The notes under the pieces are model-generated. The model had not been told where the DNA came from. It worked only from the letters and a program-made list of their open reading frames with translations, and did not search any database. From Zootoca vivipara (taxonomy: Eukaryota), in NCBI RefSeq assembly GCF_963506605.1, contig NC_083283.1:16554001-16618000 (forward strand): DNA of 64,000 nt, in the 5' to 3' direction. Every line of letters starts with the position of its first letter. The first letter of the stretch is position 1. Both the position numbers and the translations under genes were made by a program. This document shows positions 15,928 through 17,844 of this stretch, piece by piece.

Positions 15928-15976
15928 CCGTTGGAAGTTCTGTAGAGACAAGAGATCTGTCTTCCCATCAGATCTT

Positions 15977-16479
15977 CACTGAATCAACTAACCCCTGTGT
16001 TGCGAACTCCAGACTAAAGACAACAGCGGCAACGCGTGGACCGATGAAAAATGAGGGCATAAATGTATATCTTTATGAGTTGCAGCGAAGCGATATTCAA
16101 GAGTAGCGTCCATATAGTATCAAAATAAAATTCATCCAGTGATATAATTTGAATGCTTAGCGATATCTGTCGATGCAAACAATAGCAAATAATAGACAGG
16201 GATAATGACACTGTTTCAACGTGGTCTTCCTCAGTGTTCAACTCAGAAATGTATACAACAGTGGTTACATAGTTTTATGACCGCTGCTCCTTAGAAGTTG
16301 ACTGTATACATTTCTGAGTTGAACACTGAGGAAGACCACGTCGAAACAGTGTCATTATCCGGATCCCTGTCTATTATTTGCTATTGTTTGCATCGACAGA
16401 TATCGATAAGCATTCAAATTATATCACTGGATGAATTTTATTTTGGTACTATATGGACTGTACTCTTGAATATCGCTTC
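15977..16479. mobile_element. Fold-back insertion with ~170-bp inverted arms, probably a Penelope-like element of a second family
   Basis: Arms 16087-16257 and 16303-16479 (5 substitutions, one 6-bp indel); 16-bp direct repeat cttcccatcagatctt at 15961-15976 and 16476-16491; CTGAGGA...GAAAC..GTC core in each arm. Confidence 0.75.
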
Positions 16480-17844
16480 CCATCAGATCTTGGCACAAGC
16501 AAAGCTGGGCACAGGGACATTGCCGCCTGATCCAAAACTCTCCAGTGCCGTGGATCAGCAACCGTGTGGCATTGCCCTGCAAGTCTTTTATCTTCCATTC
16601 TCCAATAAGACCTCTACAACGAGAGGCCAAGTAGAGCAGCAAACCTTGTCACTGAGAGCACCCCACTCACCCTGGACCAATCCAGGGACCACCCACCCCA
16701 GACCCAGTCCCAAATTAATCCAGGGCGCAGGGCTAAAGCTTAATTCAAGTTTTTTAAATCCACACATGCACACAAGGCATCCAGAAATTCTCCGCTGAAA
16801 TCTAAACAGAAGTTCTTTACCGGAAACAAGTCCCAGAAAATAGGGAGCACCCCTGGCAAGCAGGGTTTGGAGAACAGGTAAGCCTTACTGATATTCCCAG
16901 TGCATCCTCCTAGCAGCTTCCATGTATCATCTCTACCCTGGCATTAAAAAACGGAAAAAGGAAGTAGTAGGCCCCTTTCGAAGCTCATTCACTCGCAAGC
17001 AAGCAGCTGGAGGCTAAGAGGAGGCATTTGCTTAACTGGTCAGTGAACATGTTCGGCATTCCTTCATTCACAAATGCAGGAAGTGTGGAGGGGGGAAAGC
17101 CAGCTATTGGAGCAGGAGGTGGGGAGGGTGAGGCAGAGGGGGTCAAGAGGGAGGGTTGGAAACATTGACATTGTAATCTGACCGGGATAGTGGGGTCACG
17201 AGTTCTGCCGTTCCACAAGGCGCAGTGTTGCCCAACCTCAGGAAATGGGGACATCTCATCTGGAACCTCCCACGGACTGGGACCCTCCAGCAGTCGAGGG
17301 AACTTTTAATTAAATCCTGGCTCTCATTTAAATAAATAAATGCATGAAAAGAGTGTGCCACCTACTAAGATGCCACTGCCACATGTCCTTGTTGCTTCCT
17401 TCGGAGAGACCCCCTGTTTCAACGCTAACCAAATCCAAGGCAGCTTAACATATTTGCTCCTGATGAGATCACACAGCCCATAGTGGTATGGCTGGGAGCC
17501 ATTTGTTCCATTATACTGCAATTTCCTCTCTCTCTCTCTCTTTTGTCTCATTTGTTTGGGAGACAGGCTCCCAGCCTGCATTTGAAATATTTCAAAGTGA
17601 TATGAAAGATGGTGCAATTAAAACAAAAATGACTTCAAGGACCGCTGTCCTTTATGCAGCTCACGCCGAATGGATCTTCACTTCTTCACGGTTTACAATC
17701 CTGCTGTAAACGGGAGCTCTGTATCATTTAAAAGCCCCCCCTTTCCCTCCTCCTCTTAAGTAGCAATGGAAAAGGACCCAAAAGGAACGCCTTAAAACAT
17801 GAAAGAAAAAGCTGTTGAGATGCTTGCTTATGTGGGCAGCAAGA

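What the first reader, a model, noticed from the sequence alone, without database searches (positions are those of the whole stretch)
15961..16491. Unrecognised ~500-bp fold-back insertion with a 16-bp TSD and host-atypical CpG content
Seen: ~170-bp inverted arms (16087-16257 / 16303-16479; 5 substitutions and one tccgga indel) around a 45-nt spacer, plus a ~110-bp unique extension on the left. The whole is flanked by the direct repeat cttcccatcagatctt, whose first 4 nt overlap the right arm. It is AT-rich yet has roughly 18 CpGs (hand count), unlike the depleted flanks, and resembles no other repeat in the window. The arms are not terminal TIRs, so it is not a MITE. Inference: the layout matches the Penelope insertions at 57.7 and 14.9 kb, so this may be a young or horizontally acquired PLE/retrozyme-like family. 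It would be transcribed as a long dsRNA hairpin.
Basis: partly seen in the sequence, partly recalled or inferred. Interest (0 to 1): 0.85.

Follow-up and report, generated by a model that had tools for sequence, protein, structure and literature searches.

The report
Young fold-back Penelope-type retroelement insertion
A 499-bp hairpin-shaped insertion in a lacertid lizard genome is real and recent: it is a dead copy of a rare, young, probably Penelope-like jumping gene that was reverse-transcribed from both cut DNA ends at once, which is a known way of inserting and not a new kind of element.

Summary
The insert is 499 bp (15977-16475) with a perfect 16-bp target-site duplication (TSD). It has 171/177-bp inverted arms (5 mismatches and one 6-nt indel), a 45-nt spacer and a 110-bp one-sided extension. 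It holds 18 CpGs, an observed/expected ratio of 0.99, higher than any other 499-bp stretch of the window.

Reads from two more individuals show a low-copy family of about 20-35 copies. In that family the spacer and right arm are contiguous; only the left-arm/spacer joint has single-copy depth.

The insert is therefore two overlapping 5'-truncated copies of one ~332-nt template, joined head to head. Each was primed from one end of a 16-bp staggered cut. One start uses 4 nt of microhomology.

A related species has the precise empty site with a single 16-mer.

A hammerhead-like core of the Penelope type lies on the template's sense strand, and chance does not explain it. An 8-bp palindrome sits at the fold-back point.

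The layout matches two genuine Penelope fold-backs in this window. No reverse transcriptase/endonuclease ORF could be linked, and the hammerhead is incomplete, so Penelope-like element (PLE) membership is probable (about 0.6), not shown.

Horizontal transfer and dsRNA expression were not tested. First readers of this scan noted many Penelope fold-backs elsewhere in this genome; none matched this sequence.

The parts
15961..15976 (.). Left copy of the 16-bp target-site duplication CTTCCCATCAGATCTT
   Evidence: An organism G contig has a single copy of the 16-mer at the empty site (joint 15960->16476, skips 515, both=16).
15977..16086 (-). One-sided 110-bp extension ('tail', U). It is the reverse complement of the last 110 nt (positions 223-332) of the inferred template N. 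Its outer end, 15977, is the first reverse-transcription start, at the template's 3' end (...GTTGATTCAGTG).
   Evidence: Family-level read depth of 15-34x is continuous into the left arm. There is no counterpart on the right side.
16087..16257 (-). Left arm: reverse complement of template positions 46-222. Together with U it forms cDNA 1, on the + strand, primed from the left flank.
   Evidence: It matches the right arm at 166/171. Depth falls to 1.4-2.4x towards its inner end, which shows that the joint with the spacer is unique to this copy.
16250..16257 (.). Palindrome TGTATACA at the inner end of the left arm (its twin is at 16303-16310). It marks the fold-back point.
   Evidence: Read directly from the sequence. 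Palindromes at inverted junctions are a described PLE trait (PMC3846280).
16258..16302 (+). Spacer S: template positions 1-45, natively contiguous with the right arm.
   Evidence: Family-level depth of about 26x runs across the spacer/right-arm boundary, against single-copy depth across the left-arm/spacer boundary.
16303..16479 (+). Right arm: template positions 46-222. Together with S it is the complement of cDNA 2, primed from the right flank on the minus strand. Its last 4 nt (CTTC) are shared with the TSD, a microhomology at an internal start.
16326..16371 (+). Hammerhead-like core on the template's sense strand: CTGAGGA, an extra A, GAC-cac-GTC, GAAA, then ACAG...CTGT and C (a possible GUC cleavage site). 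The 6-nt indel between the arms falls in the putative loop 3.
   Evidence: Window-wide scan: 6 hits in 128 kb, made up of 3 genuine Penelope hammerheads, the 2 arms here and 1 other. Shuffles of N: 33/20000 for the loose pattern and 0/20000 for the strict pattern. Features taken from PMC4209133.
16195..16234 (-). The same hammerhead-like core in the left arm. Here C11.1 is U (a G.U closing pair) and loop 3 is 6 nt shorter.
16476..16491 (.). Right copy of the 16-bp target-site duplication.

Best explanation
This is a dead-on-arrival retrotransposon insertion that happened in the lineage of this lacertid after it split from at least two related species.

The source is a young, low-copy family (about 20-35 copies at >=90% identity) that has kept its CpGs. 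The part of its RNA captured here (called N, ~332 nt) reads spacer, right arm, then the reverse complement of the left extension.

A 16-bp staggered cut left two 3' ends, and both were used as primers.
- The + strand end started at the 3' end of N and copied back to position 46. This gives the extension plus the left arm.
- The minus strand end started 110 nt further in, at position 222, paired through GAAG/CUUC, and copied back to position 1. This gives the right arm plus the spacer.
- The two cDNAs were joined head to head next to the palindrome TGTATACA.

The two cDNAs overlap by 171-177 nt, and that overlap is the inverted repeat. The 110 nt between the two start sites is the one-sided 'tail'.

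The family is most likely a Penelope-like element or a non-autonomous element that PLE enzymes move. This double-strand priming, the tail, the junction palindrome and a sense-strand hammerhead-type core are PLE hallmarks.

Shown: the insertion, the TSD, the empty site, the family status, the native order of N, the microhomology and the non-random hammerhead-like core. Inferred: the order of events, the enzyme and any ribozyme activity. At this locus the insert has no evident function. It would fold into a ~170-bp double-stranded hairpin if transcribed (-308 kcal/mol).
For: - Anatomy.
- Depth in organism A raw reads: flanks about 0.2-2.6x and the element about 25-34x in both individuals. Depth is continuous across spacer/right arm and extension/left arm but only 1.4-2.4x at the left-arm/spacer joint. 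So N is natively linear and the fold-back joint is specific to this copy.
- Empty sites: an organism G contig joins 15960 to 16476 with 16 shared letters, a precise empty site. An organism B contig also lacks the element.
- A second fold-back copy with other breakpoints: joint 16119->16273 plus 11 letters, 2 reads.
- Organism B keeps >=90% identity only around 16316-16375, the region of the hammerhead-like core.
- The same layout, with 14-bp TSDs and ~35-nt tails, is seen in two genuine Penelope fold-backs in this window.
- Literature: an inverted 5'-truncated copy plus a one-sided tail is typical of PLEs (PMC8557442). An Anolis PLE protein nicks and extends both strands from two start sites, which define the tail (PMC11167929). 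Palindromes occur at inverted junctions (PMC3846280).
- CpG observed/expected is 0.99, above all other windows.
Against: - No RT or GIY-YIG coding sequence is in the insert, and no longer copy could be fetched. The open frames have no homologues.
- There is no significant sequence similarity to the known Penelope copies in the window.
- The hammerhead-like motif has only a 3-bp helix II and a marginal helix I. No Rfam hammerhead model matches it, although those models also miss the genuine Penelope hammerhead at 57.8 kb.
- The tail is 110 nt, not 30-40 nt.
- The internal start uses 4 nt of microhomology, whereas the Anolis PLE was reported to start without homology.
- The 3' end TTCAGTG(A) resembles the CR1 terminal octamer at 7 of 8 positions.
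- The target is not AT-rich.
Confidence: 0.6

Rival explanations
1. The geometry is the same (two cDNAs primed from both ends of a staggered cut), but the enzyme is a LINE, for example a CR1- or L2-type element or a short non-autonomous element sharing its 3' end. That would make this a twin- or dual-priming product and not a PLE insertion.
For: - 16-bp TSD and 4-nt microhomology at the internal start, as in L1 twin priming (PMC2837659).
- The template ends in TTCAGTG(A), 7 of 8 matches to the CR1 octamer TTCTGTGA/ATTCTRTG.
- No poly(A) tail, as in CR1 and L2.
- No PLE ORF could be linked.
Against: - Classical twin priming on one RNA gives an internal deletion, not a 171-177-nt overlap.
- There is only one imperfect octamer, and it differs at position 4, a position reported as almost never substituted.
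- The sense-strand hammerhead-type core is unexpected for a LINE and is not chance.
- The junction palindrome, the one-sided tail and a second fold-back copy fit PLEs better.
- No LINE fragment in the window shares the 3' end.
Confidence: 0.25
2. The event was not retrotransposition. Either a double-strand break was repaired with captured filler DNA (including a mitochondrial fragment), or a simple insertion later became a palindrome through replication template switching.
For: The insert is AT-rich and keeps its CpGs, as mitochondrial or foreign DNA would. All family reads differ from this copy at the same positions. It has no coding capacity.
Against: - A perfect 16-bp TSD and a precise empty site point to a staggered cut filled in at insertion.
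- Both outer ends of the insert are 3'-side positions of the same template, and both inner ends are 5'-side positions, as target-primed synthesis predicts.
- GC skew is about 0, unlike vertebrate mitochondrial DNA.
- The depth ratio is the same in two individuals from two studies, and it is only about 5x single-copy depth in organism B. This fits nuclear copies, not an organelle.
- A later duplication would have had to end exactly at the TSD.
Confidence: 0.07
3. It is a fold-back or MITE-type DNA transposon, or an assembly artefact.
For: Long inverted repeats. Hairpins are prone to misassembly.
Against: - The arms do not reach the left end, which is 110 bp away.
- A 16-bp TSD is far longer than cut-and-paste transposons make.
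- Other copies of the family are mostly linear.
- The unique joint is covered at single-copy depth in two further individuals, and the TSD and empty site are exact.
Confidence: 0.03

Closest known systems
Penelope-like element (PLE) insertions with an inverted 5'-truncated copy and a one-sided 'tail' (Penelope/Poseidon clade; Craig et al. 2021, Arkhipova et al. 2013, Frangieh et al. 2024)
   Same: Head-to-head inverted 5'-truncated copies inside one TSD. An extension at one end only, explained by two reverse-transcription start sites. A palindrome at the inverted junction. A hammerhead-type core on the sense strand upstream of the start sites. A TSD of similar size to the two genuine Penelope fold-backs in this window (14 bp).
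   Different: The tail is 110 nt rather than 30-40 nt. There is no recognisable sequence similarity to the window's Penelope copies. The hammerhead core has AGG where the lizard Penelope has the AUG start codon. Helix II is only 3 bp and helix I is marginal. No RT/GIY-YIG ORF is linked. There are 4 nt of microhomology at one start.
L1 twin priming / dual priming (Ostertag and Kazazian model; Meyer et al. 2010)
   Same: Both 3' ends of a staggered cut prime cDNA. One start is internal and uses microhomology. The product is two inverted fragments of one element within a TSD of 7-20 bp.
   Different: No poly(A) tail. The two fragments overlap by 171-177 nt instead of leaving an internal deletion, so two templates or re-copying are needed.
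Minimal hammerhead ribozymes of PLEs (Cervera and de la Pena 2014)
   Same: CUGANGA box, one extra nucleotide before helix II, a G10.1-C11.1 closing pair, a GAAA box, a U-C at 16.1-17, and palindromic sequence in or near helix III/loop 3.
   Different: Helix II has 3 bp where 6-8 is usual. Helix I has at best 3 of its first 4 pairs. No Rfam model scores it. Activity is untested.
Metazoan retrozymes (Cervera and de la Pena 2020)
   Same: Short (170-400 nt), ORF-less, hammerhead-bearing retroelements. N is ~332 nt and non-coding.
   Different: The ends of N are not hammerhead cleavage sites. No tandem arrangement or circular RNA evidence was seen.

Membership tests
Penelope-like element (PLE) | Single ORF with a telomerase-like RT and a GIY-YIG endonuclease | tested here: inconclusive
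   The 499-bp copy has no such ORF. Its open frames have no homologues or Pfam domains.
Penelope-like element (PLE) | Inverted 5'-truncated copy adjacent to the main copy, the whole flanked by one TSD | tested here: met
   The description is in PMC8557442.
Penelope-like element (PLE) | Optional 30-40-bp 'tail' at one end only, lying between two RT start sites | tested here: inconclusive
   A one-sided extension is present but is 110 bp long. The genuine copies in this window have ~35-nt tails. See also PMC11167929.
Penelope-like element (PLE) | Palindrome at the inverted junction | tested here: met
   TGTATACA at 16250-16257 and 16303-16310. See PMC3846280.
Penelope-like element (PLE) | Hammerhead ribozyme motif in the pseudo-LTR, on the sense strand | tested here: inconclusive
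   The core is present on the sense strand and is not chance. Helix I is marginal and no Rfam model matches. The Rfam control also fails on the genuine copy.
Hammerhead ribozyme (PLE minimal type) | [quoted passage not shown] | tested here: met
   CTGAGGA-A-GACcacGTC-GAAA at 16326-16346. Criteria are from PMC4209133.
Hammerhead ribozyme (PLE minimal type) | Helix II of about 6-8 bp, helix I of 4-5 bp, and a cleavable NUH site | tested here: not met
   Helix II has 3 bp. Helix I has at most 3 of its first 4 pairs, by inspection. GUC sites are present. Cleavage cannot be tested here.
L1-type twin priming | Poly(A) at the 3' end, and inverted and direct fragments separated by a deletion or a small overlap | tested here: not met
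   No poly(A) at either end. The fragments overlap by 171-177 nt. See PMC2837659.
L1-type twin priming | A TSD of 7-20 bp and microhomology at the internal priming site | tested here: met
   A 16-bp TSD, with CTTC shared by the arm end and the TSD.
CR1-type LINE or CR1-tailed non-autonomous element | 3' terminal octamer (ATTCTRTG / TTCTGTGA), 1-4 copies, after a conserved 3' UTR | tested here: inconclusive
   One copy matches at 7 of 8 positions (TTCAGTGA, counting the first flank base). The mismatch is at a position reported as rarely substituted. No CR1 3' UTR was available for comparison.
MITE / fold-back DNA transposon | Terminal inverted repeats reaching both ends, and a short TSD of fixed length | tested here: not met
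   The left arm starts 110 bp from the end and the TSD is 16 bp.
Nuclear mitochondrial DNA insertion (NUMT) | Sequence of mitochondrial origin with strand-skewed composition and mitochondrial genes | tested here: not met
   GC skew is 0.008. No tRNA or rRNA was found and no mitochondrial-code ORF shows up. Depth behaves like nuclear copies. No direct comparison with the mitochondrial genome was possible.
Retrozyme | Unit delimited by hammerhead cleavage sites, tandem copies, circular RNA | tested here: not met
   N starts at ACAGTGG and ends at ...TTCAGTG, neither of which is a cleavage site. RNA was not examined.

The most novel reading that the evidence does not exclude
N is a complete, ORF-less element of ~330 nt carrying a hammerhead-type core, which parasitises Penelope enzymes. 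It entered or burst in this one lacertid lineage very recently, possibly by horizontal transfer: CpG observed/expected is ~1, there are only ~20-35 near-identical copies, it is absent at >=90% identity from one relative, and only the ribozyme-like core is retained in another. Its two reverse-transcription start sites lie 110 nt apart, three times the usual PLE tail.
Probability: 0.15. Interest if true: 0.55.

Novelty: new member of a known kind. Interest (0 to 1): 0.32.

Why it matters
The finding turns an 'unrecognised fold-back' into a readable record of one insertion event. It shows both primer ends, both start sites on the template, both stopping points and the joint.

PLE integration is still poorly understood. 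A young copy whose native template order can be read from population reads is a clean natural example of double-strand priming with overlapping cDNAs.

It also flags a low-copy, CpG-intact family that standard repeat libraries probably miss. And it shows that Rfam hammerhead models do not detect the minimal PLE ribozymes of lizards.

It is not a new class of element, and nothing suggests a host function.

Tried and rejected
- **Rfam searches.** At E<=10 the element gave only generic long-hairpin miRNA matches and no hammerhead. This negative result is uninformative, because the same search misses the genuine Penelope hammerhead at 57811.
- **Protein searches.** The 75-80-aa open frame of the arm gave nothing in the search for homologous proteins, the 1.84-billion-protein HMMER search or Pfam. 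I treat the frame as non-coding.
- **Structure of the linear template.** Its fold is no more stable than shuffles, z = +1.5.
- **Similarity to other repeats.** Smith-Waterman alignment, blastn-short and nhmmer against the window's Penelope copies and all other sequence found only chance-level matches.
- **Public collections.** Exact-pattern scans of metagenome and viral contigs for the core found 0 hits.
- **Earlier findings of this scan.** Look-ups by sequence and by relatives were blank, which means nothing here.
- **NUMT reading.** I considered it because all family reads share the same differences from this copy. I rejected it on composition and depth behaviour.
- **Retrozyme reading.** Rejected because the unit ends are not cleavage sites.
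- **TRPS1 context.** A Pfam check of the ORF at 4843-5982 gave no domain. The gene context therefore rests only on an earlier, untested note.
- The runs of N in the window were not touched.

Full report
**1. The observation**

- The 16-mer CTTCCCATCAGATCTT stands at 15961-15976 and again at 16476-16491.
- Between the two copies lie 499 bp: a 110-bp unique part (U, 15977-16086), a left arm (AL, 16087-16257), a 45-nt spacer (S, 16258-16302) and a right arm (AR, 16303-16479).
- The last four letters of the right arm, CTTC, are also the first four of the right 16-mer.
- The arms align with 166/171 identities and one 6-nt indel.
- There are exactly 18 CpGs. CpG observed/expected is 0.99 at 38% G+C, against 0.24 and 0.32 in the 2-kb flanks and 0.34 for the window. 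None of 1197 other 499-bp windows reaches it (median 0.29, maximum 0.94).
- Nothing else in the window resembles it.

**2. It is real, lineage-specific and belongs to a small repeat family**

I laid reads from two further individuals of the same species (raw Illumina reads, about 1x sampled) and contigs from two other species on 15500-17000.
- In the two individuals the unique flanks have depth of about 0.2-2.6, but the element has about 25-34. The sequence therefore exists in roughly 20-35 copies at >=90% identity.
- Almost all of these reads are 95-99% like this copy. They agree with each other against it at several positions (15981, 16034, 16107, 16283).
- A contig of organism G joins 15960 directly to 16476, with 16 letters that fit either side. 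This is the exact empty site with a single 16-mer.
- A contig of organism B also lacks the element. It lacks 65 bp more (15912-16490), so it says nothing about the duplication.
- The flanks of B and G differ from the window by about 4-9%.
- The insertion is therefore younger than those splits, and it is not an assembly artefact.

**3. What the depth profile says about the template**

- Depth is at family level and continuous from S into AR (about 26-29) and from U into the outer part of AL (about 18-34).
- It falls to 6-10 and then to 1.4-2.4, which is single-copy level, towards the inner end of AL and its joint with S.
- So in the other copies S is followed by the right-arm sequence, and that sequence is followed by the reverse complement of U. 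The AL/S joint exists only here.
- The native unit, which I call N, is S, then AR, then rc(U): 332 nt, ending ...GGGGTTAGTTGATTCAGTG.
- The insert is then two overlapping pieces of N set head to head. N46-332 is inverted on the left and N1-222 is direct on the right.
- Both outer ends are 3'-side positions of N and both inner ends are 5'-side positions.
- This is what target-primed reverse transcription from both 3' ends of a 16-bp staggered cut would leave.
  - The + strand end (...ATCTT-3') primed at the 3' end of N.
  - The minus strand end (...GGGAAG-3') primed 110 nt further in, where N reads CUUC, so 4 nt of primer-template pairing are visible.
- The 110 nt between the two starts is the one-sided extension. 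The 171-177 nt copied twice are the arms.
- Two reads in one individual show another fold-back of the same family with different breakpoints (16119 joined to 16273 with 11 letters between). Folding back therefore recurs in this family.

**4. Which machinery**

Classical L1 twin priming uses one RNA and leaves an internal deletion between the inverted and direct parts (PMC2837659). Here the parts overlap by 171-177 nt, which needs two templates or re-copying.

This is the arrangement described as typical of Penelope-like elements.
- An inverted 5'-truncated copy lies next to the main copy, and there is a tail at one end only (PMC8557442).
- Palindromes occur at the inverted junction (PMC3846280).
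- A purified Anolis PLE protein nicks and extends both strands from two start sites, and the interval between those sites is the tail (PMC11167929).

The present insert has an 8-bp palindrome, TGTATACA, exactly at the inner ends of the arms.

Two genuine Penelope fold-backs in this window have the same plan.
- The 14.9-kb copy has the TSD CTCATTTATTTAAA.
- The 57.7-kb copy has the TSD TTTAAAATCATAGT.
- Both have 14-bp TSDs and a ~35-nt tail on one side.

**5. The hammerhead-like core**

On the sense strand of N, at 16326-16346, stands CTGAGGA-A-GACcacGTC-GAAA.
- I scanned both strands of the whole window for CTGANGA, an optional extra base, a hairpin of >=3 bp and GAAA. The scan gives six hits: three genuine Penelope hammerheads (51493+, 57811+, 39175-), the two arms here and one other at 12934-.
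- In 20000 dinucleotide-preserving shuffles of N, the loose pattern appears on either strand in 33. The PLE-specific form on the sense strand appears in none. [quoted passage not shown]
- Downstream, ACAG...CTGT can form a 4-bp helix III followed by C (GUC). The 6-nt indel between the arms falls in its loop.
- Organism B keeps >=90% identity to this family only around 16316-16375, which is this region.
- Against a working ribozyme: helix II has only 3 bp, helix I has at best 3 of its first 4 pairs, and Rfam's hammerhead models give nothing even at E<=10.
- The Rfam negative counts for little, because the same search misses the genuine Penelope hammerhead at 57.8 kb.
- In the lizard Penelope the AUG inside CUGAUGA is the ORF start. 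Here it is AGG, and that frame stops after 26 codons.

**6. Coding capacity**

None was found.
- The longest sense frame is about 95 codons with no ATG. It has no relatives in two very large protein searches and no Pfam domain.
- The linear template is not unusually structured.
- The complete insert would fold as a ~170-bp hairpin if transcribed: -308 kcal/mol, z = -32.
- Expression was not examined.

**7. Rivals**

- **A LINE of the CR1/L2 kind.** It could make the same geometry. N ends in TTCAGTG(A), one letter from the CR1 octamer TTCTGTGA, but the difference is at a position reported as almost never substituted, and there is only one copy. The ribozyme-type core, the palindrome and the tail argue for a PLE. 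I give this rival 0.25.
- **Filler DNA or a mitochondrial fragment.** This is unlikely. GC skew is about 0. The depth ratio is the same in two individuals from two studies, and about 5x single-copy depth in organism B. The TSD and empty site are exact.
- **A DNA transposon.** This is excluded by the non-terminal arms and the 16-bp TSD.

**8. Age**

- The arms differ by 3% and the copy differs from its family by 1-5%. The TSD is intact and the CpGs are largely kept.
- Only one of the five arm differences is a CpG transition. The differences may come from two different template RNAs as well as from later mutation. The numbers are too small to decide.
- CpG content of ~1 and the low copy number fit a recent burst or a recent arrival. 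Horizontal transfer was not tested.

**9. Limits**

- Only one read-laying run was allowed, and its loose-end table was filled by a neighbouring SINE fragment. How other copies continue upstream of S is therefore unknown.
- No genome-wide BLAST, Dfam or Repbase search was available.
- Scans of metagenome and viral contigs found nothing.
- First readers of this scan have noted many Penelope-type fold-backs on other pieces of this genome. No note matches this family by sequence.

**10. Verdict**

This is a confirmed, young, lineage-specific fold-back retro-insertion made by priming on both strands. It comes from a low-copy family that is probably Penelope-like. It is a new member of a known kind and of modest interest.

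Noticed in passing
window 15881-15926: A 46-bp 5' fragment of a tRNA-derived SINE lies just left of the insertion. Read depth there is ~120x against ~1x in the flanks. Other copies continue TGCAGGTTCGATCCCC... where this locus does not. Rfam gives a weak tRNA match at 15879-15933.
   Followed up: partly
window 15912-16490, as seen in the organism B contig: The organism B orthologue lacks 65 bp of pre-insertion sequence (15912-15976) in addition to the element. 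This is either a separate deletion in B or an insertion shared by A and G.
   Followed up: no
window 25900-26200: An AT-rich stretch that keeps its CpGs (observed/expected 0.93). It is made of direct and inverted copies of TCGCAAGAYGAATT, with 63-nt arms at 25953-26015 and 26045-26107.
   Followed up: no
window 53350-54050: A second low-GC stretch with CpG observed/expected of ~0.9. It has a perfect 16-bp inverted repeat, TACAGTCGTACCTTGG, at 53600-53615 and 53839-53854. It may be another young element.
   Followed up: no
window 12934 (minus strand): One more CTGAAGAA-hairpin-GAAA hit outside the recognised Penelope copies. It is either chance or a decayed Penelope hammerhead.
   Followed up: no
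window 51493 (+) and 39175 (-): Two further Penelope hammerhead cores (CTGAAGAA GTGTGCATGCACAC GAAAGCT) sit in copies that are linear, not fold-backs.
   Followed up: partly
window 57811-57845: Method note: Rfam 15 hammerhead models report nothing at E<=10 for a textbook minimal Penelope hammerhead (CTGATGA-A-GTGTGCATGCACAC-GAAAGCTC). Rfam negatives should not be used against PLE ribozymes in this genome.
   Followed up: yes
window 8390-8472: ARAGORN calls a tRNA-Ala (TGC) here. It could be a gene or a SINE head.
   Followed up: no
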